Virus record (IMG/VR): IMGVR_UViG_3300032236_001613
Span: 1-64,000 of that record
Length of the DNA: 64,000 nucleotides
Direction: 5' to 3' (one strand)
Positions 5,448-63,330 of this stretch are shown here, piece after piece; positions within the stretch are counted from its first letter, which is position 1, and each line of letters starts with the position of its first letter. The notes under the pieces were generated by a model. The model did not search any database. It saw nothing but the letters and a program-made list of their open reading frames with translations, and was not told the DNA's origin. The position numbers were made by a program, and so were the translations under genes.

Positions 5448-5467
5448 ACTAGGATAAATATTAAACT

Positions 5468-29258: not shown

Positions 29259-29273
29259 CATAAATATATTACT

Positions 29274-48240: not shown

Positions 48241-48299
48241 TAAAAACCCCTAAAATGTTTTATTAATTATTTATCAAGGTCGTTCTAATAAATATTACT

Positions 48300-48755
48300 A
48301 TGCAAATACAAGAACTGCTATTAGAACTTGCTGATCAACCCTACGACTATCGATTAATCTTCCAAGATCAAACCTTGCACAAATATCGATTTTATAACGA
48401 AAAAAAGTTAATGTATTATGTATTTGTTGATAGATTACAAGAAAATCAAGTACCATACCTAGCAGTAATGTTTCAACAAGTAGATCCTAACGATTTGTGG
48501 TACTCGGGGGATAAAGTTACCGGAACAGGCGATGCTTATCGAGTATTTGCTACTGTAGCTAAAATTATTAACGATGATATAGCCAAGTACGGAGCCGAAG
48601 GACAAATGATATTTGCAGGAGAGGGCGAAAGTAGAAATAAACTCTACGATCGCATAGCTAAAAACCTAAGCCGTTATGTACCTATGTATCAACTAGATCA
48701 TGTTGAAACCGAAGGACCTACTCATGTCTACCACTTTAACAAAATCAATAAATGA
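48300..48755 (+). CDS. putative virion-packaged protein
   Basis: MQIQELLLE N-tag; TGTGDA.RVFATV...SR.KLY.R motif. Confidence 0.55.
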   Translation: MQIQELLLELADQPYDYRLIFQDQTLHKYRFYNEKKLMYYVFVDRLQENQVPYLAVMFQQVDPNDLWYSGDKVTGTGDAYRVFATVAKIINDDIAKYGAEGQMIFAGEGESRNKLYDRIAKNLSRYVPMYQLDHVETEGPTHVYHFNKINK

Positions 48756-49174: not shown

Positions 49175-49972
49175 TTATAATCTATAACGTCCTACACGAT
49201 AAACATTCTTAGCACCACGAACAGTTTCTCCTGTTCCTAATGCTCTTATTGCAGCTTGTAAGTCTACACCCTTGCTGTTAGCCCAGGCTTCTAAATCCTG
49301 CACTACATACTGTTTACCGCTTAATCGAGAAGTATTACGAGGATTGCAGATCTGTATAAGATACCCATTATGTCCTCGATCAACGACCTTATACTCTTTA
49401 ATACTTGAACCTTTCAATTTTCGATAATCATCAGCACCCCAACTTACTTCACTATCATCGTGAGGAGTTTGATCAACTTTTACTGGGATGTTTAATTTTC
49501 GGCATTGAGACTGAAATCTTTTTAAATGTCCTCGTAATCCTCGAGTATTCCAATCCTCTTGTTTTATCCAAACTTCTTTAACGCAGCTTAATGGTATATC
49601 TCCCATGGCTCTTTCTTCTTCTTCGGAGCTATGACCGCCGGGGGCTATCTGTAGATTGTCAGGATCGTAATCACTTAATACTTCCCAGTTGAACGGTAGT
49701 ATTTTAACACGATGCCTTAATTTATTTTGATCTATAACAAAGGTAACATGTGCTGTACTTTTATCGGCCCAAAGATTAACTGCGTTCCAGTTTATATTAC
49801 TAAACCATAATCGAGGATTTCTAGTTAAACTGACACTGGTATGCGCTATAACACCGTCGTTTGAAAATGCTTTTATAAAACCAGATTTTAGTATTTCAAA
49901 AGCATTGTTTAAAGTAGTGCCATGATATAAATCTTGACGATTGTTTTCTAATAATAATTCATTTAGACGCAT
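49175..49972 (-). CDS. putative ADP-ribosyltransferase-fold protein
   Basis: LYHGT...I..SG, VSLTR, EEEE: H-S-E ART-like motif order; MRLNELLLE N-tag. Confidence 0.6.
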   Translation of the reverse strand: MRLNELLLENNRQDLYHGTTLNNAFEILKSGFIKAFSNDGVIAHTSVSLTRNPRLWFSNINWNAVNLWADKSTAHVTFVIDQNKLRHRVKILPFNWEVLSDYDPDNLQIAPGGHSSEEEERAMGDIPLSCVKEVWIKQEDWNTRGLRGHLKRFQSQCRKLNIPVKVDQTPHDDSEVSWGADDYRKLKGSSIKEYKVVDRGHNGYLIQICNPRNTSRLSGKQYVVQDLEAWANSKGVDLQAAIRALGTGETVRGAKNVYRVGRYRL

Positions 49973-49984
49973 AATAGATATTTA

Positions 49985-51025
49985 TTAATTGCGTCTGCCT
50001 ACACGCTCTACAGCGTTTTCAATATACTCTTCAATATCCTGATCACTATAACCTAATAACTGCCCGGCTCGTCGATGCGCCTGCTGCCAAAGACGACTAG
50101 TAGGATTATAAGTTCTATAGACATTACTAGATGTTATCTCTAAAAACTCTTTAACATCAGCTTCATGCCCGGGTAATGCTACAATAAAACGCATAAACCC
50201 ATTGAGAAGATACTGATGTATGATCCAACCGGAGTTCTGTACTAGTTCAGCAATACGCCGTCTATGCGGGGCAAACTCCTGAACGTCAAACCAAGCTAAG
50301 GGCTTTTCTCCTGCTAGCATTAACCGAAACTCTTTACCCACATGAGGCCCTATGGTTTCGTTGACACTAGATCTAAATCCTGTATAAGCATACGGATCGT
50401 TGATCACAGGCACATTACCTCTCCATAAGAGATTACCACCTATATAGTCAAAATCATCACAACTGTGCTGGCTACAAACTAACTGCTCAGTTTCAAAGAA
50501 CTTATCCCACATAGATCCAAATGGCTCAGATAGTGCAATCACTTGCTCAAGCTTCTTTCTTAAAGGCGCTTCCTTACCTAAACTCTTTAAGTGTATTTTC
50601 ATCTTGTCAATAATGGATATCTTATCACCTGAATTAACATATCTGTCCGATGGAGACTCCTGTTCAGCATAATCAGCCATAAAGTTTAGAGCACGCTTTA
50701 ATCCACGCTGCTCGGGCAGCTCATCTAACTGTTCGGTAGGTAGCCCTATATACTCTTGCCCATCTACTGTAAACTTACGCGGTGTACCAAATCTGGGTAC
50801 ATAAGGATTATTAATACGCTTGGCTACGCGATAAAATTCTAAAGGATCAAAGGTTAATCTACTGGAAAACTCTATACCAGGATATCTAGTACCATAAACT
50901 TTGAATAACCCACCATGCGGACTAAGAAAAACTGCAGCATAGCTACCCTCACCTACATAGGTATAACCGCGAGAAGTTAGAAATTCTTTAAGCTGATCTC
51001 TAGTGATTACTTCATATATACGCAT
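49985..51025 (-). CDS. protein-kinase-like domain fused to second domain
   Basis: VGEGSYAAVF, FKV, P.F, E.L, D...GNL, V.NDP; after SVNE a second domain ending GQLLGYSDQDIEEY. Confidence 0.6.
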   Translation of the reverse strand: MRIYEVITRDQLKEFLTSRGYTYVGEGSYAAVFLSPHGGLFKVYGTRYPGIEFSSRLTFDPLEFYRVAKRINNPYVPRFGTPRKFTVDGQEYIGLPTEQLDELPEQRGLKRALNFMADYAEQESPSDRYVNSGDKISIIDKMKIHLKSLGKEAPLRKKLEQVIALSEPFGSMWDKFFETEQLVCSQHSCDDFDYIGGNLLWRGNVPVINDPYAYTGFRSSVNETIGPHVGKEFRLMLAGEKPLAWFDVQEFAPHRRRIAELVQNSGWIIHQYLLNGFMRFIVALPGHEADVKEFLEITSSNVYRTYNPTSRLWQQAHRRAGQLLGYSDQDIEEYIENAVERVGRRN

Positions 51026-51028
51026 ATA

Positions 51029-51397
51029 TTATTCGGGCAGCATCTTTTCCGCTACACGTTTAATTAATTGACGCTGGCTAACAGTTAACTCTAATACTTG
51101 TTTAGCTACATGCGTTTTAGTTGACGAGTTAACTGTAATATACCCTTCTTGATCAACTTCGCCTACCGGCTGCTGTATACTAGGTACTGTTTGATCAGGC
51201 GAACCCGTTTCGAGACTAACTGTATAACGATACTCGGGATTACCTAGATAAGGATAAAGCGCAACATAGAATCTATACTTATTAGGATCTAGACGTCCAA
51301 CTAATAAATGCCCAATACCAGATTTAATAGCTAAGTCAGTAAAATCATGACGTACAATAGCAGAGACATTTTCTCGTAATAATTCTGTTACTCTCAT
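51029..51397 (-). CDS. putative virion-packaged protein
   Basis: MRVTELLRE N-tag. Confidence 0.55.
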   Translation of the reverse strand: MRVTELLRENVSAIVRHDFTDLAIKSGIGHLLVGRLDPNKYRFYVALYPYLGNPEYRYTVSLETGSPDQTVPSIQQPVGEVDQEGYITVNSSTKTHVAKQVLELTVSQRQLIKRVAEKMLPE

Positions 51398-52281
51398 TGT
51401 TTATGCTTCTTACTGTGCACAGCATCCTTCTCTGGCTCACTGTCTACGTCAAAATCAAATCCATGTTTGTCATCAGATCGATCAGGTAATGCTAAGGGTT
51501 CTTCTTCAGTGTCTAAATCAGCTAATCGATTACGCATAGCTTTTACTTGATCAGGACTCATTTGATCAGTCTCTGACTTATCCGATACTCCGGATAATGC
51601 TTTGACTCCTGCTAACTGTGCTAATCTATCTAACCCAAACTCTGCAGCACTGTGCGCTGCTGCCTTTGTAGCAATATCAGCAGCTTGAGGTTCTTGACTA
51701 TCTTTAGGTTCGTCATCTAGTGTACCTGCAACTCTTTGATCTACATAAGATCCTACATCGGTTTCGTCAACTATATTTCCTTCTTCATCTGCGGTAGAAT
51801 CTACGCCATATGTTTGCGGATCGTACTCAAGACTTACAGATTCGAATTTTTTGGTGTTAGGATCTTGATAAGTTAATAAAGCTTCATAGGGATTTTCATC
51901 ACCAAACGATGTGTGTAACCACGGTACTCCACCTTCGCTGACTCCCGTTTCAAAATGTGAACCCCAGGGCATAGTTCCATGCGGCCCGTTACCAATCTCG
52001 GTTACATCATTTACACCAGGTTGCCATTCTTCAAACTCGGGTGCTTCACTATAACTAGAATCCAAATAAAGCGTACCCATATTCTTTACAGTCCAACTAG
52101 TAGCTGCAGCTACTAGTCCATCGATCATTGAACCGGCTTCAACTGCTGAAGCAGCAGCCGCTGTAGCAGCCACAGGCTCCGCAGCAGTACCTACAGGCAA
52201 CTTAGCACCTGTGGCCGCAGCTATTCCTGCTGCTCCTAGACCTTTGAGAAAATCTCTACGGGAAATTTCATATATACGCAT
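51394..52281 (-). CDS. acidic protein with twin-arginine (Tat)-like signal
   Basis: MRIYE-ISRRDFLKGLGAAGIAAA; late promoter. Confidence 0.6.
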   Translation of the reverse strand: MRIYEISRRDFLKGLGAAGIAAATGAKLPVGTAAEPVAATAAAASAVEAGSMIDGLVAAATSWTVKNMGTLYLDSSYSEAPEFEEWQPGVNDVTEIGNGPHGTMPWGSHFETGVSEGGVPWLHTSFGDENPYEALLTYQDPNTKKFESVSLEYDPQTYGVDSTADEEGNIVDETDVGSYVDQRVAGTLDDEPKDSQEPQAADIATKAAAHSAAEFGLDRLAQLAGVKALSGVSDKSETDQMSPDQVKAMRNRLADLDTEEEPLALPDRSDDKHGFDFDVDSEPEKDAVHSKKHKQ

Positions 52282-52366
52282 AATGTTTTATTTACCGGCA
52301 ACACAGACCTTTTCGCGCGAAGCGCCGAGCGCAGATTTTTTTATAACCCCGATAAATACCCAGACA

Positions 52367-53297: not shown

Positions 53298-53594
53298 TTA
53301 TGGTGGGAAATTTTTGAATGAGGCAGTTTTGACCCATGCATCAGGCACCATACGATGCTTGCTGACAAATAAATCATGCAATTGATCACCTGTGACATTA
53401 TAACGACGACAGACTTTTTGCATGATTTGATCAATTATGTCATAGTTAAACTTGAGCCCTTGACTGTGTCTGACCCTTAATGCACGCTCTAAAGCAGCTA
53501 CAGCTTTACTGGGATGAGGGGTTCCTGAAACATGTGCAGGCTTCATGGACTGTTGAGAATCAAATAGGTCGATTAAAGATCTTAAGGAACGCAT
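53298..53594 (-). CDS. small late protein
   Basis: TATAAATA-5-ATG; LHDLFVSKH...PD.W. Confidence 0.55.
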   Translation of the reverse strand: MRSLRSLIDLFDSQQSMKPAHVSGTPHPSKAVAALERALRVRHSQGLKFNYDIIDQIMQKVCRRYNVTGDQLHDLFVSKHRMVPDAWVKTASFKNFPP

Positions 53595-53947
53595 ACGAAT
53601 ATTTATATACATTGTAGAGAGGCCTATAGTACACGCAAAAAATTGCGCTGCAAAAAATAAAGACCACGCAGATCTCGGGGCCTGGTGGTTTTACGACCCC
53701 GGGGTATGGTTAGCAAGCCCCAACAGCAGCACAGCACGCAGCTGAGCACTATATACCTCCCGTGGGGTCTATATGCCTCCCACCTGAGCCGGCCGGCACA
53801 GCTGCCCCGGAAAATTTTTTCTTTTAGTTTTCCGAGAAAAAGATAGCTTATTGTGCCGTTGGGAGAGCCTCGCAATAAAAAAGCACGGGCTAGGGTTTTT
53901 GTAATTAGATAATAGTACAGTTGTGCTATATTATATACGCTGTTAGT

Positions 53948-54033
53948 AACCTGTGCATAGTAATATAACTGTAACGCAAATGCTAAGTTATTGTTTTTGT
54001 TAGCATTTTTTTAATTGCGTTACTACACAGGTT
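53948..54033 (+). other. long nested inverted repeat (hairpin/cruciform or structured RNA)
   Basis: AACCTGTG/CACAGGTT, GTAACGCAA/TTGCGTTAC, AAATGCTAA/TTAGCATTT. Confidence 0.7.
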
Positions 54034-54426
54034 CCCGTTAATTAAAAAAGCGCAGTGCAGTTTGTGTGCACGGGGTAGTCCCCGTGTTAATAAAAATACA
54101 CAGTTGCAGTACCTGCAGCAACGCAGTGGGAGGTGCCCCTCGATTACATCAGCTGCTGTGCAGATTTTTTAGTGGGGTCTGGTTGACAGAGTTAACTTAA
54201 CTGTTAAACTTAACATATGCAAACAGCAGCACATACAACACGCAGTCAACAACAGCAGGAGCAGGGTGTGTGCGTGCGCTGCTGGGAGGTCTCTCGCAAA
54301 GCAGTCTTTAAACTGCGCTGTGCGTTACTGGGAGAATCCCGTGTTTGCAAAAGCAGCGCACACGTTTGTGCAATTGGGAGAATCCCTAGTTTGTTGCTGC
54401 TGCACGCAAAAGTGCACCAGTGGGAA

Positions 54427-54515
54427 GATTACAAAAACTTAATCTAATAGTGCTTGCAACTGCTGTTGCCGGCGCTATACTACATAACGTAGCAATAGTG
54501 CTACAGCACGCACAA
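54427..54515 (+). promoter_or_regulatory. early promoter cassette, copy 1
   Basis: GATTACAAAAACTTAAT-10-TTGCAA-16-TATACT-GTAGC/GCTAC hairpin-AGCACGCAC. Confidence 0.75.
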
Positions 54516-54528
54516 TAGGAATCTGTAT

Positions 54529-54816
54529 ATGCCCTCGTATCGTATTCGTTTGCTTGCCAATGGCGAAGTTGAGATTGCTGTCAACAGCCGCCGCGCACGT
54601 GGTCGTGTAGTAGCTGAAAAGACTGTTGAGGTTGAAGAGCCCGCAGCAGCAAAGCGTCAGACCAAAGCAGCGCAAGTGCGCGACAAGATCCGTCAAGTCA
54701 AGCCTGTAATGGGTGATGCTGGGCGCCGCGTTGTTAGCGCATGGGCACGCACAAAGTTGGGTATGAATCCTAGCATGGCTGCTACTTATGTGAAAAACAA
54801 CTGGACCTGCTGCTAG
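54529..54816 (+). CDS. basic early hypothetical protein
   Basis: AGGA SD after cassette; C-terminal LGM...A.TY..N. Confidence 0.7.
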   Translation: MPSYRIRLLANGEVEIAVNSRRARGRVVAEKTVEVEEPAAAKRQTKAAQVRDKIRQVKPVMGDAGRRVVSAWARTKLGMNPSMAATYVKNNWTCC

Positions 54817-55016
54817 TTTACAGCAGAAGAGAGCAGTAGCATTAGTGCTGCTGCTCTCACCAGTTGTATTCTAAGAGTTGGGTTTGGGCCGGCGGGGTTT
54901 GACCCCATAGCAGTTTCTGCAATGCTAAGGCCTTTAGCGGGGTATTCAAGAATAAAGGTTGATCTGTAGATAACTACTGTTATACTAACAGCGTTAAGCA
55001 CGCTAAGGAGTTTGTT

Positions 55017-55127
55017 ATGGCTCGTGTTAAGAAGAATGGGTGCCTAATGGCACGTAAGACCCGACAAGTTAAACATGCCGGATATAAGTGCGCTGCAACT
55101 GGGCGCTGGCGCCGAGGGTTCAAATAA
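55017..55127 (+). CDS. 36-aa Arg/Lys-rich peptide
   Basis: MARVKKNGCLMARKTRQVKHAGYKCAATGRWRRGFK; TAAGGAG SD and promoter upstream. Confidence 0.6.
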   Translation: MARVKKNGCLMARKTRQVKHAGYKCAATGRWRRGFK

Positions 55128-55225
55128 TGGCTAAGGTACGGCGTCCTCGTAATCAACAGCGTGTGTTGCAGCAGCGAATTGCCTGCAGCCGTGTGGGCGG
55201 ATGTCGTCCAAAACGGAGCCGCTAA
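55127..55225 (+). CDS. 32-aa Arg-rich peptide
   Basis: MAKVRRPRNQQRVLQQRIACSRVGGCRPKRSR; TAATG coupling. Confidence 0.55.
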   Translation: MAKVRRPRNQQRVLQQRIACSRVGGCRPKRSR

Positions 55226-55362
55226 TGTTAATCGACGATGAATCCGAAGACTATTACGAGCGTCGTGTGGCTCGTGCTGATGCTGCTTTCGATCTCTTTA
55301 TTGATTGGACTAGTGTTGCAGCCATGATTGGGATCGTGTTATATTTGTTGCTGCGTTGTTAA
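55225..55362 (+). CDS. 45-aa peptide with C-terminal TM helix
   Basis: MLIDDESEDYYERR...VAAMIGIVLYLLLRC; TAATG coupling, GGAG SD. Confidence 0.55.
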   Translation: MLIDDESEDYYERRVARADAAFDLFIDWTSVAAMIGIVLYLLLRC

Positions 55363-55389
55363 ACGTTTTCCTGTGTGTTGTGCATGGTT

Positions 55390-55418
55390 GGGCGGAGTTC
55401 GCATCCGCCCTTTTTTTT
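55390..55418 (+). terminator. intrinsic terminator
   Basis: GGGCGGA-7-TCCGCCC T8. Confidence 0.9.
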
Positions 55419-55540
55419 AGCTGGCTGCGGTCTCGGGGTTCCTCCCACTAACAGCGTTTTGGTATAATACTCCTGCTGCAGTATGTGTTGGGAGGCGCCC
55501 CAGTGTTTAAAATGTTTGTGCGCTATTTTCTTATTGGGAT

Positions 55541-55637
55541 GATTACAAAAGCTTAATGTTAAAGTGCTTGCTTTATTTTTGTGTGTGCTTATAATAGCAA
55601 TTGTAGCAATAAAGCTACGCATAAAATAAGCACGCAC
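55541..55637 (+). promoter_or_regulatory. early promoter cassette, copy 2
   Basis: GATTACAAAAGCTTAAT-10-TTGCTT-16-TATAAT-GTAGC/GCTAC-AGCACGCAC. Confidence 0.7.
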
Positions 55638-55638
55638 T

Positions 55639-55875
55639 ATGTACACATTGGAAGTTAGCTATCCGTTGACGCTGTATTGGAACAGCATTAACGTAGATCG
55701 GGAGATCTCTGAAGCTGTTAATGCTACGAGCACAGGCAGCGGAGCGGGATTTGGGCAACGTGATCTCACGTTCCGCTTTACAACTGCAGAGGCTGCTAAT
55801 GCTGCTGCAGAGCGAGCACGACGTATACACGCTAGCATCTCGTGCAACGTGTCTGCTGACGCTTACTACGCTTAA
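55639..55875 (+). CDS. early hypothetical protein
   Basis: Follows cassette 2; GSGAGFGQRDL.F.F. Confidence 0.65.
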   Translation: MYTLEVSYPLTLYWNSINVDREISEAVNATSTGSGAGFGQRDLTFRFTTAEAANAAAERARRIHASISCNVSADAYYA

Positions 55876-56020
55876 ACAACTGCCTCGTTACGCACAGCTG
55901 AAAATGCTGTGCGTGCAGGCGGGGTCAGAATCCCAGGAAGAAAAAATTGCAAAGCTCGATGCAGGGGTGGGGTCAGATCCCGTGCAAACTTTTACGCAAA
56001 CTTTTGCAAGACAGTGAGAT

Positions 56021-56110
56021 GATTACAAAAACTTAATGCAAAAACAGGTTGCAACTGCTACTAGACTTGCTATGCTACATAACGTAGCGATACTGCTACA
56101 GCACGCACAA
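56021..56110 (+). promoter_or_regulatory. early promoter cassette, copy 3
   Basis: GATTACAAAAACTTAAT-11-TTGCAA-16-TATGCT-ACATAACGTAGC..GCTACAGCACGCACAA. Confidence 0.75.
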
Positions 56111-56120
56111 AGGGTTAGAT

Positions 56121-56423
56121 ATGAACGAGATTGCTAAAGCCCTAATCACACTCGCTAGCGAGATTAAGGAGCAGGCGGGCCCTGTCTCACTGATCTTCCA
56201 TGCAGCAGGAAGTCAGGGCGACTTTGAGACCGCGTTGTACATCTTCAACGACAAGAGTCTCTTCAACGCTACTTACTTCACTGAAGAAGAGCTTGAGAAG
56301 TTTAACCTCATCATGCCCGCTATTGCAGATGGGCTCAACAAGTTGCAGAAGTTTGACGAGCAAATTGCTGCATTAGATGCCGCTAAGTACCACTCAGCAG
56401 ACTATCTCAAAGCAGTTAACTGA
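56121..56423 (+). CDS. early hypothetical protein
   Basis: Follows cassette 3; terminator at about 56435-56466. Confidence 0.7.
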   Translation: MNEIAKALITLASEIKEQAGPVSLIFHAAGSQGDFETALYIFNDKSLFNATYFTEEELEKFNLIMPAIADGLNKLQKFDEQIAALDAAKYHSADYLKAVN

Positions 56424-56631
56424 CACATAGCCGGCGCATAGTAGGGAACTGCTATGCGCTTTTTTGTTGCCGTTAAGAACCCCGCAGAAGGTTTTTACGC
56501 ACATGTATATAAAGTCTCGGGGTAGCCCCAAGGACTGCAGCCGCAAACGTGAACGAGGTCTAGCGGGGTATTTAAAAAGGTTGACGGGCTGTAGTTGTGT
56601 CTGTATGCTTGTGCTGCTAAAGGAGCACGCA

Positions 56632-56739
56632 ATGAACTTTAAGTACTTCGCACCATGGCTTTTTGCATTCATCTTATTACTGTTGGGACACTTTACTGCT
56701 GCTATCTGCATTGCCGTGTTGATCTTGCTCTGCAGCTGA
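56632..56739 (+). CDS. 35-aa hydrophobic membrane peptide
   Basis: MNFKYFAPWLFAFILLLLGHFTAAICIAVLILLCS; TTGACG-17-TATGCT promoter, AAGGAG SD. Confidence 0.6.
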   Translation: MNFKYFAPWLFAFILLLLGHFTAAICIAVLILLCS

Positions 56740-56820
56740 AAAATCTTTGTGAGGCAGAGTTGACAGCGTTGTTGCAACGTGTAAACTACTAATGTAGAAC
56801 TAATAACAAGGATCTCATTT

Positions 56821-57024
56821 ATGCACGCTAAGTTCAAAATTGTAGATCGTAAGACTGGAGTTGTACTCTACGACCAAGTGCACGGAGTCGGTCGCGCCAC
56901 GCACTTGCTGTATGGTGCTCGTGCAAGTAATACGCGAGTGTTCAAGACTGATGAGCGAGGCTCGCGTGAAATTACTCTCAACTTTAATATTTGGCAGCTG
57001 GAAAACGGCTTACGGGAGGCTTAA
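56821..57024 (+). CDS. early hypothetical protein
   Basis: TTGACA promoter at 56761, AAGGA SD. Confidence 0.65.
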   Translation: MHAKFKIVDRKTGVVLYDQVHGVGRATHLLYGARASNTRVFKTDERGSREITLNFNIWQLENGLREA

Positions 57025-57203
57025 TGGCTATGCTACAGCGTTACCGTTGCTCGGGCATTGACGGTATGGACAAGGACCATCAGGGAGATTGGGTTCGTTA
57101 CGAAGACTATCTCTCACTGTTACAGAAGTTGGATGAAATCCGCATAAATCTTCTCCAGCTTCGCGATCCACGTTATCGGGACATCCAAAAGGAATTCAAA
57201 TGA
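57024..57203 (+). CDS. early hypothetical protein
   Basis: TAATG coupling, GGAGG SD; G.WVRYED motif. Confidence 0.6.
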   Translation: MAMLQRYRCSGIDGMDKDHQGDWVRYEDYLSLLQKLDEIRINLLQLRDPRYRDIQKEFK

Positions 57204-57445
57204 AAACCAATGACATTAAGAAAGGTCAGCGTATCCAGCAACGTAATGGCTGGTACGGGACTATGTTTGATGACAAGAAGGGCAACATCCGTTGCGTTGA
57301 AGTTGAAGGTGACTTCAAAGAGATTGGGAGTGTTTACGCACACGAGATTATTCGTGCGCAGGATGCTAACGGTGTTTGGCACACAGTCGAACACACCGAA
57401 GCTCAGATGAAACTTAAGTCCAAGTTGGGTGCCATGGGGTGGTAA
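57200..57445 (+). CDS. early hypothetical protein (SH3-like beta)
   Basis: ATGA overlap, AAGGA SD; IKKG.R...GSVY.H.I. Confidence 0.65.
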   Translation: MKTNDIKKGQRIQQRNGWYGTMFDDKKGNIRCVEVEGDFKEIGSVYAHEIIRAQDANGVWHTVEHTEAQMKLKSKLGAMGW

Positions 57446-57539
57446 CACCTTTGTACAGGTACTGTTGATCTTCACAGTAGACAAAAGGTTGGCGAACTCT
57501 TTATAATAGAGGAGTTCGCTAATCCTATGGAGATCAGAG

Positions 57540-57638
57540 ATGTTTGGTCGTCGAAAGGCTACTGTGCGAAAGGTTCGTTCAACGCCTCGTTCGCGTGCTG
57601 CTTACGGTTCTACTACGACTCGCCGCCGTAAGCGTTAA
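57540..57638 (+). CDS. 32-aa protamine-like Arg-rich peptide
   Basis: MFGRRKATVRKVRSTPRSRAAYGSTTTRRRKR; own promoter, GGAG SD and terminator. Confidence 0.6.
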   Translation: MFGRRKATVRKVRSTPRSRAAYGSTTTRRRKR

Positions 57639-57673
57639 TGATTTTGCGTGCTGCCGCAATGATGCGGCACTTT

Positions 57674-57711
57674 GGGCAATCGTGTTTAGCACCTCGATTG
57701 CCCTTTTTTTT
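57674..57711 (+). terminator. intrinsic terminator
   Basis: GGGCAATCG-12-CGATTGCCC T8. Confidence 0.85.
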
Positions 57712-57856
57712 ATCTGTTGATTCTGCTGCGGGGTATTCCCACTGGCTAAACAATCTACCTATATATACCAGTGCACTATAAGTGAGAACAAGAGCTTAGA
57801 CTGATCTTAATCTACATAAGCCTTACACACCGACGATTTCGTAGTTTTTGGCTTTG

Positions 57857-57993
57857 TAAGTCATTGATTCTAAACACTGCCCCGACATCTAGTAGAGTAG
57901 TTCTGCATACAGCAAACACCGACTCGGGGCAGTTTCGCTACAAGCCGCTGTAGACTATACAGATGAAAACCACTAGGGGTTAAGTCATTGATT
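57857..57993 (-). promoter_or_regulatory. two IHF-consensus sites flanking a 10-bp inverted repeat
   Basis: TAAGTCATTGATT at 57857 and 57981 (reverse complement AATCAATGACTTA = WATCAAN4TTR); ACTGCCCCGA/TCGGGGCAGT between. Confidence 0.6.
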
Positions 57994-58202
57994 TCATTAG
58001 AGTGGAACTACCGATCAAATAGATTAAAAAGATTAGATGATGAAAGAGTTGGTCTTAGTTTTCCGGCCGGGGTTGCCCCGTGATCTAATAATAGCACGGT
58101 TTGGTCGAGATCTGTTTACATTCTTTAAAGACGGGGCCAGGTTGACAGATTTAACTTAACGCATTAATATTGGCGTTGTAAACAATAATTGGAGCAGCTG
58201 AG

Positions 58203-58349
58203 ATGCTGGTTTATGTAGAATTGGCTTTAGTTGTGGCTTATATTGCATGGGTCGCACGGTTGTCGCTGAATGCAATGAAAACGGATGCCAGGGACGAACT
58301 GCGTAAGAGCTTTAAGGAGTTCCGCCGAGCGTTTGAAGATCTGCACTAG
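58203..58349 (+). CDS. 48-aa single-pass membrane peptide
   Basis: MLVYVELALVVAYIAWVARL...; TTGACA promoter, GGAG SD. Confidence 0.55.
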   Translation: MLVYVELALVVAYIAWVARLSLNAMKTDARDELRKSFKEFRRAFEDLH

Positions 58350-58470
58350 TACAGCCGGTGGGGTGGTTCTCACAGACTGATGCGCTGCATCAAAAAGTCT
58401 GTGAGAACCGGTTGACAACTGCTCTGCAGCGTTTATAATAGAATACACACGCAACCACCATAGGTGATTT

Positions 58471-58761
58471 ATGGCTACTACGAATGTGATCCGCATTGCT
58501 TTAGACGAGCGTATTGTTGAACGCTTGAAGAAGCCAATCCTCAAGGTTTGGCAGCAGGTCAGTCACGATGTCATGCGAGATGCTGAAGATATGGGCGAAC
58601 GCATTGACAATGAGAGCGCCATAGAGTGCTGCATTGATGCAGATCGTTTGCGCTATGAGGCTAACGATCGCGCTGCAGACGACTTTTTTAATATGATTTG
58701 CACCGAGCACGGCTATCCAGCTGTTCTCACGTTCCTTTCCAAAAAGATACGATTGGTTTAA
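58471..58761 (+). CDS. early hypothetical protein
   Basis: TTGACA-17-TATAAT promoter, AGGTG SD. Confidence 0.7.
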   Translation: MATTNVIRIALDERIVERLKKPILKVWQQVSHDVMRDAEDMGERIDNESAIECCIDADRLRYEANDRAADDFFNMICTEHGYPAVLTFLSKKIRLV

Positions 58762-58956
58762 TGAGATGATCATAGAAGTTATTAAAGCTGTCTACAACAG
58801 CCGAACGGGACAGCTGAATGTTACACTCAGCGACGGTGCCCGCCAGGTTGTGGTAGAAGGTGTAGAAAACATCGAGCGGGATTACCTGCTACGCGAGTTT
58901 TACAGTCTCGCACGTTGGTCTGCTGCAAACGTGAACAAGGTCTAGCGGGGTATTAT

Positions 58957-59118
58957 ATGGATATAGAACGAGAACAACTGCACGCACGTATACAACAACT
59001 GAAAACTCGTGCAGCAGCCGCAGAAGCATTACTGCTGAAGATCGAAGTCACCCTATGGGATCGTTCGGAAGCTAAAGACATTCAAGATCTCATACACAAC
59101 TATTTCAAGAGGGACTAG
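58957..59118 (+). CDS. small coiled-coil hypothetical protein
   Basis: Probable start MDIEREQL. Confidence 0.5.
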   Translation: MDIEREQLHARIQQLKTRAAAAEALLLKIEVTLWDRSEAKDIQDLIHNYFKRD

Positions 59119-59119
59119 T

Positions 59120-59422
59120 ATGCGCTACCGTCCAAGTCAAGAAACTATTGATGCTATTCTAAAGAAACAAATGACTGATGAGGATATTGCTCGCTACCGA
59201 CGTGCCTCACGCTTATACAAGATCTCGGGTGTTGTTGCTATTACTATCTGGCTGGGATGGATCGTAACTGGCTTCTTACACTTCAACAAAGCCAACGATA
59301 TCTTGTTTGAAGGCTTGTGGGCATCGTTGTTCTTTTGGGGTTACAGCATTTGGTTCGGTAACTGCGATCTACATCGTATGGATTACGTAGATCGTTTAGA
59401 TCGCAAAAAGCGTTCTCAGTAA
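59120..59422 (+). CDS. two-TM membrane protein
   Basis: Two hydrophobic segments; GAGG SD. Confidence 0.65.
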   Translation: MRYRPSQETIDAILKKQMTDEDIARYRRASRLYKISGVVAITIWLGWIVTGFLHFNKANDILFEGLWASLFFWGYSIWFGNCDLHRMDYVDRLDRKKRSQ

Positions 59423-59661
59423 TGCAAACGAAAGCTGGACGTAACCGGCCGTGGGGCTAATCCCAAGACTACAAACGCGAAGCTGGAGACAGGTTCTTGG
59501 GAAAATAGCACGACCGTACTATAAAACGACCGTGCTAATAGCACGACCGTTTGATCCCATGACTACAAACTTGCGCAAGCTCTTTGACCTAGTGGGAGAG
59601 GTTGACAACCCGTTTGCAGCCTCTTATAATGTATTTGTAGAGTTAACATAAGGCGGTTGAT

Positions 59662-59931
59662 ATGATTAAATTCAACAAGCACTTTGTCTCGAATGGCACT
59701 TTGCGTGCTCGTTGCTGGTATACTGTGGACAATCGTATTGATGGACGTCGATGCGTCTCAATATACGCTAAAGACTACGGACACCAATTGGCTCAGGTTA
59801 TTACCACTGCAGAGTACAAGAACGATACAGACATCTCAACGGATTACTTTGAAAAAGGTAAGATTGTTTTGTTTGATGATCATCCTCTGTACTCAGAAGC
59901 GCGAAAGCGTGCCTTAGCCAACGAACGCTAA
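59662..59931 (+). CDS. early hypothetical protein (D-x5-DYF motif)
   Basis: TTGACA-17-TATAAT promoter; terminator at 59940-59970. Confidence 0.7.
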   Translation: MIKFNKHFVSNGTLRARCWYTVDNRIDGRRCVSIYAKDYGHQLAQVITTAEYKNDTDISTDYFEKGKIVLFDDHPLYSEARKRALANER

Positions 59932-60398
59932 GTCGTTCTAATACGCAGGCTCAAGTCCTGCGTATTTTTTAACAATTGGAAACCCCAGTGAACTACGTGC
60001 ACGCACGTGATTGCCCGTGGGGTAGCCCCAAGATCTGGTTCTTTGGCCATAGAAGAAGGTTTTTTTACTGTCTTGGGGTTGCCCCACTTTTAGCCGCTGC
60101 AGGCTGCCGTATTTGATAGCGGGGTATTTAAAATCCCACTATAAAAGAGCTACAGCTGGCAACAGGATCTTGTGGTCACAACACTTTTTTAATATTATCA
60201 AAAATATTTTTAAGATTATGTTGACTTCTCGATAGATTGTGTTAAATTAGTACACAGAGCCGAACAGGGCGGCTTAACTTAACTAGGGGAGTTCCATTGA
60301 TGTTACTGCAATCTAAAACTCTCACCACCAGAAACTGGGCAAAAGCTCAGCATCCGGTGGGAACTGCTCTCAGTCGTTGTCGAAACTAAAACCATAAA

Positions 60399-60944
60399 CT
60401 AGACTGGGATGTAAAGCAACTCCTCGCCGGGTGGGACTACTAAATCCCTGGCCCTCCTCACCAAATCAGGATCCGCTAGCGTGAGAACATCCAACAACGC
60501 AGTCTTCTCCTCAAGGTAAACACGAGCAAACTTCGGATCATACCTTGTGATTGTGGCAGAATTGGAAATCATGTCCGCAACTTTGATCGTCTGCGCCGCC
60601 GCAGGCGCTCGACTCAAATGCTCACGATCAATGGCTTTACGTGCACGTCGATTACCGTCCGTGGGCCTAGATACATCTGTAAGCCAATGCACAAGGTTAG
60701 CCACCGCCTCTCCAAACTCCTCATAAAGCACATCATAGGTGACACTAGTGTCTTCCAAAACATCATGCAACCAAGCTGCTGCCAACATTTCATCCGTGTG
60801 CTCAACTGATTGCACAATACCCACAACTTCTGCTGGATGCACAATATAAGGCTCGTTTGTGTACTTACGACGCTGCCCAACAGCAGCATGAGCAGCAGTA
60901 GCAAAGATACGAGCATGATTCACCAATGGGTTTGTTTTGTTCAT
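60399..60944 (-). CDS. HD-domain small alarmone hydrolase (SpoT-HD/Mesh1-like)
   Basis: AH..Q.RK...EPYIVHP..V, AAWLHDVLEDT, IKVAD..SN; TTGACG-17-TATAAT-6-ATG. Confidence 0.85.
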   Translation of the reverse strand: MNKTNPLVNHARIFATAAHAAVGQRRKYTNEPYIVHPAEVVGIVQSVEHTDEMLAAAWLHDVLEDTSVTYDVLYEEFGEAVANLVHWLTDVSRPTDGNRRARKAIDREHLSRAPAAAQTIKVADMISNSATITRYDPKFARVYLEEKTALLDVLTLADPDLVRRARDLVVPPGEELLYIPV

Positions 60945-61095
60945 GAGCACATTATAACAGCAAATCCACGACCCGTCAATCAATCGATAGCGGGGTATTT
61001 AAAGACCCCACTACTACTGGGGCATATATAGCTAGGCCGATAGCGGGGTATTTAAAAGGAATAGCTGTGCACCCAAAGAGTGCACAGCATATCTA

Positions 61096-61512
61096 TCAAA
61101 CAATTACTTGGTAGGGCTTCCGCCAACTGCCTACGTGAATGCTGCAGTAGTATGCAGTATCAAAGTAGTCGATCTCACTGCGAGTATTGTCGTACCATTC
61201 AGCTGACTTGAGAGCTGCTAACAACTCTTCCAACGCCGTACGAGCAACACCTTCATAGTGGTCATGAATCCAATAGACGTTAACATCCTCATAGCCACTA
61301 GTATTGGGCCGAAAACCATGCATCTGATAACGCTGGTTCTGCCCACAGAACTCATTGCTGTTGCCGATAAAGTCGATAGGTCCCGAAGTCAACTTCAACT
61401 GAATAGTGCTGTGATTGCCAACACTGAGAGAACCCTTGAGCCCATACTTCTTCAACACGGGCTTGACAGCTGCTGCGATAACAGCTTTCTTCTCTTGATT
61501 CATATAAGCCAT
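61096..61512 (-). CDS. early conserved phage protein (possibly LPD29-like)
   Basis: K.SLSV.NHSTI...WYDNTRSEIDYFDTAYY; AGGAG SD. Confidence 0.6.
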   Translation of the reverse strand: MAYMNQEKKAVIAAAVKPVLKKYGLKGSLSVGNHSTIQLKLTSGPIDFIGNSNEFCGQNQRYQMHGFRPNTSGYEDVNVYWIHDHYEGVARTALEELLAALKSAEWYDNTRSEIDYFDTAYYCSIHVGSWRKPYQVIV

Positions 61513-61566
61513 TGCATGCTCCTAAACAAAGGGCGACAGCACTATTGCTGCCGCCCATGCAATATA

Positions 61567-61794
61567 CTACTCTTCCCAACCGTAGTCGATCTCGCTAGTG
61601 GTATCAAAAGTCCACTGCAAACGATCACGGAAGTTAACAGAACGCACACGATCACGCTCACGATCCTGCAACTCAATGTCTGCAGCATCTTCCTCGTCAT
61701 CGGTGATATCAGCTTCGAGCTCAGCATCATCTGGCAACTCGATATCCATACGCTCATCAGCGTCCAAAACATCAGCAATGGTAAAACGGCTCAT
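61567..61794 (-). CDS. highly acidic 75-aa protein
   Basis: About one third D/E; AAGGAG SD and TTGACC promoter. Confidence 0.65.
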   Translation of the reverse strand: MSRFTIADVLDADERMDIELPDDAELEADITDDEEDAADIELQDRERDRVRSVNFRDRLQWTFDTTSEIDYGWEE

Positions 61795-61916
61795 CTCAAG
61801 TGCTCCTTTGCACTAACTCTACAGCTCTAAGTATACGCTCTGCGTACTATAGGTCAACCGTTTTTAAAAAGAAAAGTTGGGCAGTTTTGAGTGTTGCCCA
61901 GCACCGGAGCAGCCTG

Positions 61917-62132
61917 TTAAACTGGCAGCTTGATCTCAAGGATCTGAGCCTGCTCGCTCACAAAGTTATTGCGAACGATGCCCGTCCAAAACGCAGTCTC
62001 AGTGATGTGATAACGCAAACCGCCCGAGGCAGTGCCATTGCCCGAAAGCATACGAGCTACAGCACGCACACTCTTGAACGTGCGGCGCTCGCCCGAAGGA
62101 AAAGTAACGTCAATCTTGATTGCCTTGTTCAT
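61917..62132 (-). CDS. small putative DNA-binding protein (NUMOD1-like)
   Basis: RTFKSVRAVARML; AGGAG SD; TTGACA promoter. Confidence 0.55.
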   Translation of the reverse strand: MNKAIKIDVTFPSGERRTFKSVRAVARMLSGNGTASGGLRYHITETAFWTGIVRNNFVSEQAQILEIKLPV

Positions 62133-62239
62133 GTCATTTGCTCCTGTTTGTGATGACATTTACTAACTCAACGCATGTAGTCTACAGTCTTTTATCCAAC
62201 CTGTCAACTACTTTTTACCAACTTTCTTCAAACAATTTT

Positions 62240-62314
62240 TGGTAGGACCGGAGAGATTCGAACTCTCGACCAACGGATTAAAAGTCCGCTGCTCTACCGC
62301 TGAGCTACGATCCC
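62240..62314 (-). tRNA. tRNA-Lys (UUU), CCA encoded
   Basis: GGGATCGTAGCTCAGCGGTAGAGCAGCGGA-CTTTTAA-TCCGTTGGTCGAGAGTTCGAATCTCTCCGGTCCTACCA folds as a cloverleaf. Confidence 0.95.
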
Positions 62315-62336
62315 ATTCGAAACTAGTGTATACTAC

Positions 62337-62504
62337 TTAATAAGCGTCTGTAACCTCGCGGTCCGTACGCCAGTTGTAGCGCAATTCCCGCTCATGGTCC
62401 TTGGCACTCTTGTGTGTACGAGGACGGTTAAATGTGTTAAGATTGCGGGCTACAGGATTGCTCTTGCGGCGCCGGTTCTTGTCCAAATAGTTGTGATCGT
62501 TCAC
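62337..62504 (-). CDS. 55-aa basic peptide (missed by ORF track)
   Basis: GTG start, AGGAG SD, TTGACC-17-TATACT; MNDHNYLDKNRRRKSNPVARNLNTFNRPRTHKSAKDHER... Confidence 0.6.
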   Translation of the reverse strand: MNDHNYLDKNRRRKSNPVARNLNTFNRPRTHKSAKDHERELRYNWRTDREVTDAY

Positions 62505-62967
62505 TGTCTGCTCCTGGCAGCGTTTAGTGTCTATACAGTATACGCAGCCCGTGGGGTAAGGTCAACCACTCCCCAAGAAATATTTTTTTAAGCTTGAACT
62601 AGGTCGTGGGGCAGGATCCCAAGATTTGGATCTCATGATTCTTGACATCTTGTGGGGCAAAATCATATAATATAGGCTGAAATTTGTGGCAAAAGTGCCA
62701 CAAAATCGGAGGTTCTCTTGACCATTTCTTGAGATTTTGAGAGGAAAAGTTTAGAAAATTTTGGGCAAAATTGAGGTTGACCTCCTCGGGGATGAGAGGC
62801 TATGCTAGAATACTTCTCTCACCTTTCGCCATCATTCTGGCCATTTTTTCGTCATTATTTCAGATGTTTTGGCCATTTTTTCTCATTGTTCTCATCAGAA
62901 TTTCTACACACGGAGAGTGTGTATAGATTCAGAGTTTTATCGTTGTTAGTCGATGATGAGTCTACTG

Positions 62968-63201
62968 TTAATCAAAGTTACCAATGGATAGAGTCACGCT
63001 TGAACGGATTACGCGAGCCAAGAGTAGGATTGCAGCAGTATGTTGGATATCAAGCTGTTGAGTAGTCCAATGATAGTAGTTAACCACAGCCCAGTTCCAT
63101 AGTTGACTAACCAGTACAGCAGCGAATAGTACAGCTACGATTGTTAGAGCTGTGCGTAAGAACAGTTCGTTCCAGGAGGGTAGTTTGTTTGTGTCTAACA
63201 T
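62968..63201 (-). CDS. small membrane protein
   Basis: Two hydrophobic stretches; TTGACA-17-TACAAT promoter, AAGGA SD. Confidence 0.6.
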   Translation of the reverse strand: MLDTNKLPSWNELFLRTALTIVAVLFAAVLVSQLWNWAVVNYYHWTTQQLDIQHTAAILLLARVIRSSVTLSIGNFD

Positions 63202-63330
63202 AGTGATCGGATCCTTATGTGTTAGTGTGTAGAGAGTATTGTACGAGGGTTAGTTGGAGATGTCAAGTGTTAGTAAAAAATCTGCGCGATACGCTAGTGC
63301 GTAGTATTCTACAGCGGGGTATTATGGTCG

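What the first reader, a model, noticed from the sequence alone, without database searches (positions are those of the whole stretch)
51394..52281. Twin-arginine signal placed directly behind a putative protease-cleaved capsid tag
Seen: MRIYE|ISRRDFLKGLGAAGIAAATG has a textbook S-R-R-x-F-L-K motif and hydrophobic h-region, followed by a very acidic body. Inference: capsid maturation could expose a Tat signal so the ejected, folded protein is exported by host Tat to the periplasm (for example for superinfection exclusion), or it could jam the Tat translocon.
Basis: partly seen in the sequence, partly recalled or inferred. Interest (0 to 1): 0.6.

Follow-up and report, generated by a model that had tools for sequence, protein, structure and literature searches.

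The report
Phage Tat signal behind capsid-protease site
A giant T4-like phage gene carries a textbook bacterial export (Tat) signal right after a short tag that looks like a capsid-protease cleavage site. The same pairing recurs inside many uncultured phage polyproteins, which suggests virion-delivered proteins are re-exported to the new host's periplasm, though no step has been tested.

Summary
The ORF is real: window 51394-52281, minus strand, 295 aa. It starts MRIYE-ISRRDFLK followed by a Gly/Ala h-region. Pfam TAT_signal scores 30.1 bits against a cut-off of 22.7.

The window opens a 328-kb T4-superfamily jumbo phage (PA5oct/Rak2-like) that encodes a gp21-type prohead protease. The start M-[RKQ]-phi-x-[ED]-phi (phi = hydrophobic) sits on 16 of about 395 genes, where 0.26 are expected. 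It mirrors the gp21-cleaved N-termini of T4 gp24 and Alt. In PA5oct, genes with this start are mostly virion proteins confirmed by mass spectrometry.

The RR pair, the rest of the signal and the Glu three residues upstream stay conserved in homologues whose bodies are only 26-34% identical.

Searches found the same cassette in dozens of uncultured phage proteins, mostly hundreds of residues inside tagged polyproteins. Phi-x-E sits at -5..-3 in 31 of 56 viral Tat-like modules but only 2 of 119 bacterial ones. Cargo includes TonB C-terminal domains.

Packaging, cleavage and export are all inferred. The acidic body has no confident fold match. I found no description in the literature.

The parts
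51394..52281 (-). Whole gene: 295-aa protein (P0001) plus stop codon
   Evidence: Homologues at 39-88% identity start at the same Met.
52267..52281 (-). Codons 1-5, MRIYE: a short T4-type N-terminal tag ending in a predicted prohead-protease site, I-Y-E|
   Evidence: The tag class is enriched 60-fold at gene starts. T4 Alt is cut at ITE-6 (PMC5694885), and T4 gp24 and Alt have matching N-termini. E5 is invariant.
52243..52266 (-). Codons 6-13, ISRRDFLK: the twin-arginine consensus (S/T-R-R-x-F-L-K)
   Evidence: Pfam PF10518 at 30.1 bits, above its cut-off of 22.7. R8, R9, F11, L12 and K13 are invariant in homologues.
52204..52242 (-). Codons 14-26, GLGAAGIAAATGA: a Gly/Ala-rich h-region with a possible short c-region (T-G-A|K)
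   Evidence: This segment is 82-100% identical in homologues whose body is only 26-34% identical. The signal-peptidase site is inferred, not tested.
52135..52203 (-). Codons 27-49: Ala/Pro-rich linker of variable length, low model confidence
   Evidence: pLDDT below 50
51712..52134 (-). Codons 50-190: folded acidic body, a long helix packed on an antiparallel sheet, with a conserved MPWG motif
   Evidence: AlphaFold2 with 26 sequences gives pLDDT 81-95 across the core. No confident structural relative was found.
51592..51654 (-). Codons 210-230: conserved motif ...LDRLAQLAGVKAL, resembling the C-terminus of this phage's scaffolding protein
   Evidence: 71-95% identical across homologues. The scaffold ends ...EIRKLAGLK and the PA5oct scaffold ends ...ELRRLAGIK.
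51397..51591 (-). Codons 231-295: disordered acidic tail with a conserved L-P-(A/D) motif
52289..52295 (-). GTAAATA box 7 nt upstream of the ATG: an imperfect copy of the ATAAATA box found 4-8 nt upstream of 23 genes, including tail-fibre and virion genes
   Evidence: Its role as a late promoter is inferred from the T4 consensus TATAAATA (my own knowledge).
51029..51397 (-). Downstream gene in the same operon (4-nt overlap), tagged MRVTELLRE|N
   Evidence: The tag is almost identical to T4 gp24, MAKINELLRE|S.
49985..51025 (-). Tagged gene, MRIYEVITRD...; its N-terminus is paralogous to the target's but has no RR and no h-region
   Evidence: A homologue sits next to a Tat-module polyprotein in L019.
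49175..49972 (-). Tagged gene, MRLNELLLE|N, with a weak ADP-ribosyltransferase-like match
   Evidence: PARP, E 0.003; Arr-2, E 0.076. It parallels the packaged T4 ADP-ribosyltransferase Alt.
48300..48755 (+). Tagged gene, MQIQELLLE|L (DUF6934)

Best explanation
P0001 is most likely a T4-style internal (capsid-packaged, ejected) protein with a Tat export signal added. The proposed route follows; no step has been shown experimentally.
1. The protein is made late in infection.
2. It is recruited into the prohead core through its N-terminal tag, and perhaps also through the scaffold-like ...RLAQLAG... motif.
3. The phage's gp21-type prohead protease cuts after Glu5 (I-Y-E|I). This leaves a new N-terminus, ISRRDFLK..., which is a near-consensus Tat signal.
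4. On the next infection the protein is ejected with the DNA into the cytoplasm.
5. Host TatABC recognises it and moves its acidic body into the periplasm, where it is either released by signal peptidase (possible T-G-A|K site) or left anchored.
6. There it acts before any phage gene is expressed.
In relatives the same cassette is buried inside tagged polyproteins. In those the signal is cryptic in the producing cell and can only be unmasked by the capsid protease. The periplasmic job of this body is unknown. Its fast divergence next to conserved targeting modules suits an arms-race effector, for example envelope takeover or exclusion of competing phages.
For: Directly established from the sequences:
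- The Tat signal scores above the Pfam cut-off.
- RR, the FLK motif, the h-region and E5 are invariant in homologues. The signal region is 82-100% identical where the body is only 26-34% identical.
- The genome encodes a Peptidase_S77 (gp21-type) protease, a scaffold and a gp23-type capsid protein.
- The tag class is on 16 of 395 genes against 0.26 expected. Arg is encoded by CGT, AGA and CGC and Leu by TTA, CTA and CTG, so selection acts on the peptide, not the DNA.
- The tags match the N-termini of T4 gp24 and Alt. The T4 record marks gp24 as cleaved by gp21. T4 Alt loses six N-terminal residues at ITE-6, and T4 internal proteins are loaded through a capsid targeting sequence (PMC5694885; PMC3012670).
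- In PA5oct, the closest cultured relative by scaffold (40% identity), 4 of 6 strict-tag genes are ESI-MS/MS virion proteins against a background of 93/461, P 0.017.
- P0004, an orthologue, has the signal at residue 164 after ...NLDE|VS, with no nearby start codon except M140.
- P0020 and P0022 carry the same body family after residues 640 and 530 of tagged polyproteins.
- An unbiased DNA-pattern scan for RR[DG]FLKGxGA found 56 unique viral modules. In 45 of them RR lies more than 40 aa into the ORF, and 31 have phi-x-E at -5..-3. Among 119 bacterial/archaeal modules only 2 have it (Fisher P 8e-17). The median in-frame open stretch upstream is 138 aa in viral modules and 38 aa in bacterial ones.
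- The cargo directly behind the module is a TonB C-terminal domain in P0036 (E 1.8e-23) and in L077, where it follows an A-I-A|Q site.
- One polyprotein (L082) contains the same 'virion structural protein' PHROG as window gene 29274-30944.
Against: - No proteomic, cleavage or export data exist for this phage or any family member. The family is absent from cultured phages.
- In P0001 the signal is already N-terminal, so it could work in the producing cell without any cleavage.
- The tag here is only the first half of the usual 9-10-residue form, so its loading function is uncertain.
- The upstream promoter-like box is imperfect.
- Viral modules are related to each other, so the 31/56 count is not 31 independent events.
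- The profile search was biased towards the query's own N-terminus for the 'phi-x-E-I-S-RR' subtype, although the pattern scan was not.
- The host is unknown, so the presence of a Tat system is assumed.
Confidence: 0.45

Rival explanations
1. Ordinary phage-encoded Tat substrate. The protein is made during infection and exported by host Tat in the producing cell, with MRIYEIS serving simply as the n-region. The resemblance to the tag reflects recombination among the conserved 5' ends of a gene family. Internal copies in polyproteins would act as internal signal-anchors (N-in, C-out) without cleavage.
For: An N-terminal signal of this quality needs nothing else to work. The N-terminus is clearly paralogous to that of neighbour 49985 (MRIYEVITRD), so the tag could be a historical remnant. 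Some relatives have a Met 2-30 residues upstream of RR that could serve as an internal start. Internal Tat-dependent helices are known in actinobacterial Rieske proteins (my own knowledge).
Against: Glu at -3 and a hydrophobic residue at -5 are conserved across very different upstream contexts, and this pattern is nearly absent from bacterial Tat signals (2/119). The tag class is linked to virion proteins in PA5oct and T4. Full-length polyproteins start with their own tags. The scaffold-like motif has no role in this model.
Confidence: 0.25
2. The Tat-like segment is a membrane or translocon-targeting device rather than an export signal. After ejection, or during assembly, it tethers the protein to the inner membrane or to TatBC. 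The purpose could be to block host Tat, to anchor ejected proteins or DNA at the entry site, or to bring precursors to the membrane-bound prohead assembly site.
For: The h-region is unusually conserved for a mere signal (82-100% identity, near-invariant GLGAAG), which suggests a specific contact. P0001 has no clear A-x-A site. T4 proheads nucleate on the inner membrane (PMC5694885).
Against: Many relatives have classical A-x-A sites about 20 residues after RR, and two carry TonB_C domains that work in the periplasm. Both features point to real translocation and signal-peptidase exposure.
Confidence: 0.15
3. The shared N-terminal 'tag' is a nucleic-acid signal (for example for translation of leaderless late mRNAs) and has nothing to do with capsids, so the juxtaposition with the Tat signal has no meaning.
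For: An ATAAATA box sits only 4-8 nt upstream of the ATG of 23 genes, including many tagged ones, so their mRNAs may be leaderless.
Against: Codons for the conserved residues vary freely. Tagged genes inside operons lack the box. The same phi-x-E precedes Tat modules hundreds of codons inside ORFs. T4 precedent shows such N-termini are protease substrates.
Confidence: 0.05

Closest known systems
T4 internal proteins IPI-III and Alt (capsid targeting sequence, gp21-processed, ejected with the DNA)
   Same: There is a short N-terminal tag with a basic residue 2 and phi-x-E sites, shared by unrelated and fast-evolving proteins of one phage. A gp21-type protease is present. A neighbouring tagged ART-like gene parallels Alt.
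   Different: There is no sequence homology to T4 IPs or Alt. The tag here is only 5 residues long. The T4 proteins act in the cytoplasm and carry no export signal.
Bacterial Tat substrates (signals such as those of TorA, SufI, NapA; Pfam PF10518)
   Same: It has the S-R-R-x-F-L-K consensus, a moderately hydrophobic Gly/Ala h-region and an N-terminal position in this protein. It scores above the Pfam cut-off.
   Different: It is encoded by a lytic jumbo phage and preceded by a conserved phi-x-E (2/119 in bacteria against 31/56 in phage contigs). In relatives it lies far inside long ORFs.
Ejection/inner-body proteins of phiKZ-like giant phages (SPN3US, phiKZ), processed by the prohead protease at A/S-x-E
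   Same: They are capsid-internal proteins with propeptides removed after Glu, sometimes at several sites, and they are delivered into the cell (PMC5694885).
   Different: They belong to a different phage lineage and use a different P3 preference. No export signal has been reported on them.
Polyvalent (multi-domain, virion-delivered, proteolytically processed) phage proteins described by comparative genomics (my own knowledge, not checked here)
   Same: The relatives P0020, P0022 and L045/L077/L084 are long multi-module proteins with predicted cleavage sites between modules.
   Different: The role of a Tat signal as one of the modules has not been described to my knowledge, and I did not find it in the literature searches.
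Phage periplasmic or envelope proteins made after infection (T4 RI with a cleavable Sec signal; superinfection-exclusion proteins such as T4 Imm/Sp, T5 Llp)
   Same: These are phage proteins that act in the envelope of the infected cell (PMC8385771, listed; the rest is my own knowledge).
   Different: They are synthesised in the infected cell, use Sec or lipoprotein routes, and are not capsid-tagged.

Membership tests
Tat signal peptide (Pfam PF10518) | Consensus S/T-R-R-x-F-L-K | tested here: met
   S7-R8-R9-D10-F11-L12-K13; invariant in homologues
Tat signal peptide (Pfam PF10518) | Score above the curated family cut-off | tested here: met
   30.1 bits against 22.7, E 4e-7
Tat signal peptide (Pfam PF10518) | Moderately hydrophobic h-region directly after the motif | tested here: met
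   GLGAAGIAAATG; 90% small or hydrophobic residues over 20 aa
Tat signal peptide (Pfam PF10518) | N-terminal position in the precursor | tested here: met
   RR is at residues 8-9 in P0001. In many relatives it is not met: RR lies more than 40 aa into the ORF in 45 of 56 viral modules.
Tat signal peptide (Pfam PF10518) | c-region with an A-x-A signal-peptidase site | tested here: inconclusive
   P0001 has only T-G-A|K, or a distant A-S-A. Clear A-x-A sites exist in relatives. No SignalP/TatP tool was available.
Tat signal peptide (Pfam PF10518) | tatC- and RR-dependent export | not testable with these tools
   This needs reporter fusions. The complex prediction with E. coli TatB/TatC gave no verdict.
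T4-type capsid targeting sequence / gp21-cleaved propeptide | Same N-terminal peptide on several otherwise unrelated proteins of one phage | tested here: met
   16 of 395 genes against 0.26 expected; their functions include NT5C, ClpS-like and ART-like proteins
T4-type capsid targeting sequence / gp21-cleaved propeptide | Ends in a (L/I/V)-x-E cleavage site | tested here: met
   I3-Y4-E5. E5 is invariant. The site pattern is as in T4 Alt, ITE-6.
T4-type capsid targeting sequence / gp21-cleaved propeptide | Full-length tag of about 9-10 residues (M-K/R-x-x-E-phi-phi-x-E) | tested here: not met
   P0001 keeps only MRIYE; the second half is replaced by the Tat motif. Family members of the 'MKINEILKE-AGEP-x-NPS-RR' type do have the full form.
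T4-type capsid targeting sequence / gp21-cleaved propeptide | gp21-type (Peptidase_S77) prohead protease in the same genome | tested here: met
   PF03420 at 88.9 bits, genome position 307459-308088, beside the scaffold and the gp23-type capsid gene
T4-type capsid targeting sequence / gp21-cleaved propeptide | Protein present in virions and N-terminally processed | not testable with these tools
   Only indirect evidence: 4 of 6 tagged PA5oct genes are ESI-MS/MS virion proteins
T4 internal proteins IPI/IPII/IPIII/Alt (homology) | Detectable sequence similarity of the mature part | tested here: not met
   No PHROG hit, no Pfam hit other than the signal, and no tblastn hit in 50,697 phage records

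The most novel reading that the evidence does not exclude
A widespread, undescribed phage strategy. Cryptic Tat signal peptides are placed directly behind prohead-protease sites in capsid-packaged proteins and polyproteins. Capsid maturation unmasks them, so virion-delivered effectors (for example TonB C-terminal-domain proteins and this acidic protein) are re-exported by the new host's own Tat system into the periplasm within moments of DNA entry, before any phage gene is expressed.
Probability: 0.4. Interest if true: 0.9.

Novelty: new variant of a known kind. Interest (0 to 1): 0.8.

Why it matters
If correct, this adds a new destination to phage protein ejection. Until now ejected internal proteins have been seen as cytoplasmic effectors (anti-restriction, RNA polymerase modification) or as trans-envelope conduits. 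A protease-unmasked Tat signal would let a virion pre-load periplasmic effectors and deploy them through the victim's own export machine.

It would also explain why some phage polyproteins hold perfect signal peptides hundreds of residues from their start. It gives a sequence rule (phi-x-E, then 2-8 residues, then RRxFLK) for finding such cargo in metagenomes.

The idea is directly testable with standard E. coli/T4 tools. It could also supply a natural 'caged signal peptide' design for phage-based protein delivery.

Tried and rejected
Searches and tests that led nowhere:
- PHROGs and Pfam gave nothing for the body.
- tblastn of P0001, P0010 and P0008 against 50,697 cultured phage records gave no match.
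- The search for related loci in IMG/VR returned only one relative, the same contig as L010.
- Two AlphaFold2 models were searched against PDB by Foldseek, PDB by VIA-align wide (twice), BFVD and the ESM Atlas. The best results were Z 5.0-5.6 (Apa, Mog1; several cystatin/NTF2/PsbP-like sheets) and TM below 0.3, which is too weak to name a fold.
- The Atlas feature search gave no usable hit.
- Complex prediction of residues 6-60 with E. coli TatC and TatB(1-55) gave no verdict. It is not evidence either way.
- The sigma-70 promoter and terminator scan around the gene start found nothing relevant on the minus strand.
- The P-SSM2 homologue of an L077 segment (PSSM2_123) lacks the Tat module.
- Literature searches combining Tat or twin-arginine with phage, virion, ejection, jumbo phage or prohead protease found no description of this arrangement. 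The library searched does not cover all journals.

Ideas considered and rejected:
- Lipoprotein: there is no Cys.
- Pilin-like protein: the only support is a Foldseek hit at E 0.03.
- A nucleotide-level explanation of the tag: the codons vary.
- P0004 as an artefact of a missed start codon: there is no ATG, GTG or TTG within 23 codons upstream of its RR.

Full report
THE OBSERVATION

The finding's coordinates bound a real ORF on the minus strand (ATG 52281-52279, stop 51394-51396) encoding 295 aa. Residues 5-25 match Pfam TAT_signal at 30.1 bits, E 4e-7, against a curated cut-off of 22.7. The motif is S7-R-R-D-F-L-K13, followed by GLGAAGIAAATG. The protein has pI 4.3, 55 acidic against 23 basic residues, and no Cys. 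It is the only such module in the genome. The sequence-level observation is confirmed.

THE GENOME

The window is the first 64 kb of a 328,068-bp IMG/VR virus record estimated at 92% complete. It encodes a T4-type large terminase, tail sheath, gp32 and UvsX. It also encodes a Peptidase_S77 (gp21-type) prohead protease, a scaffold and a gp23-type major capsid protein, 35-40% identical to T4 gp23 over the core. The closest cultured relatives are jumbo myoviruses. The terminase is about 43% identical to those of Rak2-like phages. The scaffold is 40% identical to that of Pseudomonas phage PA5oct.

THE TAG

- A start of the form M-[RKQ]-[ILV]-x-[ED]-[LIV] is found on 16 of about 395 genes, where 0.26 are expected (P about 1e-23). 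It occurs at only 2 of 1652 internal Met. Looser variants occur on several more genes.
- Arg and Leu codons differ between copies, so the selection acts on the peptide.
- Typical copies read MRVTELLRE|N, MRLNELLLE|N and MRIQELLLE|Y. T4 gp24 starts MAKINELLRE|S and T4 Alt starts MELITELFDE. The T4 record notes that gp21 cleaves gp24.
- PMC5694885 states three relevant points. Six residues are removed from Alt at ITE-6. All T4 internal head proteins join the core through a capsid targeting sequence. These proteases all cut after Glu.
- Tagged proteins in this genome include an NT5C deoxyribonucleotidase, a ClpS-like protein, a DUF6934 protein and a weak ART-like protein. This is a host-takeover flavour like that of T4 Alt.
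- In PA5oct, whose annotation marks ESI-MS/MS virion proteins, 4 of 6 strict-tag genes at annotated starts are virion proteins (gp333, gp279, gp254, gp104). gp105 (VRLNEI...) is a virion protein too. The background is 93/461 (P 0.017).
- I conclude that the tag is very probably a T4-type capsid-loading or propeptide signal. This is inference from analogy plus one proteome in a relative.

CONSERVATION OF THE CASSETTE

- Six close homologues from metagenomes (39-88% identity) keep E5, R8, R9, F11, L12, K13 and the h-region invariant.
- In P0005 and P0006 the signal region is 86% identical while the body is 26-34% identical. A second island...LDRLAQLAGVKAL (residues 210-230), is 71-95% identical.
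- That island resembles the C-terminus of the scaffold (...EIRKLAGLK; PA5oct ...ELRRLAGIK) and of two other genes near the head module. This is a possible second capsid-targeting element (inference).

THE KEY COMPARATIVE RESULTS

1. The orthologue P0004 is one continuous 480-aa ORF that starts with its own tag (MKISEV...). The Tat motif is at residue 164, after ...NLDE|VS. There is no start codon within 23 codons of it. Its neighbours all start with the tag.

2. A profile search of 1.84 billion representatives found 39 proteins.
   - One large subfamily of about 300-aa proteins reads full T4-like tag, then AGEP-x-NPS, then RRGFLK (for example MKASEFIIE|AGEP...).
   - Others carry the module after phi-x-E-[IV]-[ST], either at the N-terminus or deep inside proteins of 244-1081 aa. 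One 1921-aa protein (P0041) carries four modules that lack the phi-x-E. P0020 and P0022 hold the same body family as P0001.
   - Of 43 modules, 39 have phi-x-E within 14 residues upstream.
   - P0020 lies in a cluster of tagged genes that includes a homologue of window gene 49985-51025.

3. I also scanned with a DNA pattern encoding only RR[DG]FLKGxGA, with no constraint upstream, to avoid bias from the profile.
   - IMG/VR gave 56 unique modules. In 45 of them RR lies more than 40 aa into the ORF, in ORFs of up to about 1800 aa.
   - 31 have phi-x-E at -5..-3, typically ...GSLEE|ID-RRGFLKG. Most of the rest have [VI]-[DN]-E|AD[MI][NS]-RR.
   - The complete ORFs start with tags such as MRAIEFLTE.
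   - The same pattern in bacterial and archaeal genomes gave 119 unique modules. Only 2 have phi-x-E at -5..-3. 106 have an ATG within 40 aa upstream. The median in-frame open stretch upstream is 38 aa, against 138 aa in the viral set. Fisher P is 8e-17.
   - Caveat: the viral modules are related to one another, so this P overstates independence. Even so, the residues around the conserved Glu vary widely.

4. Many viral modules have textbook A-x-A sites about 20 residues after RR. Two have TonB C-terminal domains directly behind the signal: P0036 (TonB_2, E 1.8e-23) and L077 (...TDE|AID-RR...SAIA|QSP, TonB_2 at 903-978). TonB_C works in the periplasm, so these signals are meant to translocate.

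5. One polyprotein (L082) contains the 'virion structural protein' PHROG that also matches window gene 29274-30944. The PA5oct gene in the same position, directly after the large terminase (gp279), is a virion protein by mass spectrometry.

MECHANISM

A Tat signal buried hundreds of residues inside a cytoplasmic protein would not be expected to act as an ordinary export signal. A Tat signal placed exactly after a site for a protease that is active only inside proheads becomes usable only after capsid maturation. The most economical reading is therefore: load into the prohead, cut after Glu, eject, then export by the new host's Tat system.

For P0001 itself the signal is not masked, because only five residues precede the I-S-RR. 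Export in the producing cell therefore remains possible, which is why I put the full chain at about 0.45. The rivals are ordinary Tat export (0.25), membrane/Tat tethering or blocking (0.15) and a nucleic-acid meaning of the tag (0.05).

An ATAAATA box lies 4-8 nt upstream of 23 genes, including tail-fibre, virion and tagged genes. The target has GTAAATA at 7 nt. This fits late, possibly leaderless, expression (inference from the T4 late consensus).

THE BODY

With 26 family sequences, AlphaFold2 gives a confident core (residues 50-190, pLDDT 81-95): a long helix on a six- to seven-stranded antiparallel sheet plus a C-terminal helix. The linker and tail are disordered. No structural search gave a convincing relative: best Z 5.0-5.6, TM below 0.3. 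Its function in the periplasm is unknown. The pattern of conserved targeting modules around a fast-evolving body matches what is described for T4 internal proteins (PMC3012670).

COMPARISON AND NOVELTY

The gene works like a T4 internal protein with a changed destination, and like a bacterial Tat substrate with a phage-specific unmasking step. It is not homologous to the T4 internal proteins and lacks the full-length tag. It meets the sequence criteria of a Tat signal.

I found no cultured-phage member and no paper describing Tat signals behind prohead-protease sites. I rate it a new variant of a known kind (capsid-tagged ejected proteins), with a general principle that would be new if confirmed.

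LIMITS

Everything beyond the sequence patterns is inferred. The host is unknown. No SignalP/TatP tool was available. The complex prediction with E. coli TatBC gave no verdict.

Noticed in passing
window 1697-1703, 5455-5461, 29261-29267, 48289-48295, 49979-49985 and about 18 more sites in the genome: An ATAAATA box lies only 4-8 nt upstream of the ATG of 23 genes (tail fibres, virion genes, many tagged genes). It resembles the T4 late promoter, but sits so close to the start codon that the mRNAs would be leaderless or nearly so. No Shine-Dalgarno sequence is visible at these genes.
   Followed up: partly
window 49175-49972 (-): This tagged protein (MRLNELLLEN...) has weak ADP-ribosyltransferase matches (Pfam PARP, E 0.003; PDB Arr-2, E 0.076). 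It is a possible packaged ART, analogous to T4 Alt.
   Followed up: partly
window 49985-51025 (-): This tagged protein starts MRIYEVITRD. Its N-terminus is paralogous to the target's but carries no Tat signal. It has a Gly-rich loop (YVGEGSYAAVF) that looks kinase-like, yet there is no Pfam, PHROG or PDB sequence hit. A homologue lies beside the Tat polyprotein in L019 5465-6055.
   Followed up: partly
genome 308103-309197, 300294-301007 and 299878-300039 (outside the window); PA5oct gp330 in L020 8977-10083: The scaffolding protein and two nearby gene products end in ...R-[KR/L]-L-A-G-[LI](K). The PA5oct scaffold ends the same way. The motif also follows the start tag in L005 4114-4206 and ends several Tat-family proteins (...RMKDLAG[IV]K...). 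It may be a conserved capsid-interior binding motif.
   Followed up: partly
genome 82950-84125, 86461-86871, 80522-88280 (outside the window; locus L011): A second cluster of tagged genes includes an NT5C-type 5'-3' deoxyribonucleotidase and a ClpS-like adaptor. These are enzymes one would not expect in a capsid unless they are ejected as host-takeover factors.
   Followed up: partly
window 53600-64000: GC content rises to 0.45-0.48, against 0.33-0.41 elsewhere. Long ORFs are scarce. The only RNA gene found is tRNA-Lys(UUU) at 62240-62314 (-). The nature of this region is unexplained.
   Followed up: partly
window 53298-53612 (-): A small ORF matches phrog_10346. That family overlaps the DUF6321 domain seen in Tat-module polyproteins L045 and L032.
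   Followed up: no
window 52300-52345: A GC-rich triple GCGC element followed by a T-run on the + strand lies in the divergent intergenic region upstream of the target. The simple terminator scan did not call it.
   Followed up: no
L077 3427-7482, L045 3812-8275, P0020, P0022, P0029, P0034: The polyproteins are mosaics of small, widely shared phage modules...CW-x-GY...VPNCV......DPNP-x-R-x-GKAINV..., DUF6321 and GP88. These modules also occur as separate small genes in T4-like cyanophages such as P-SSM2, between gp15 and gp16.
   Followed up: partly
PA5oct NC_071039 84079-84711 and 180349-181020: PA5oct is annotated with two 'head maturation protease' genes, and both products were detected in virions. 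I did not look for a second protease in the present genome beyond the single PF03420 hit.
   Followed up: no
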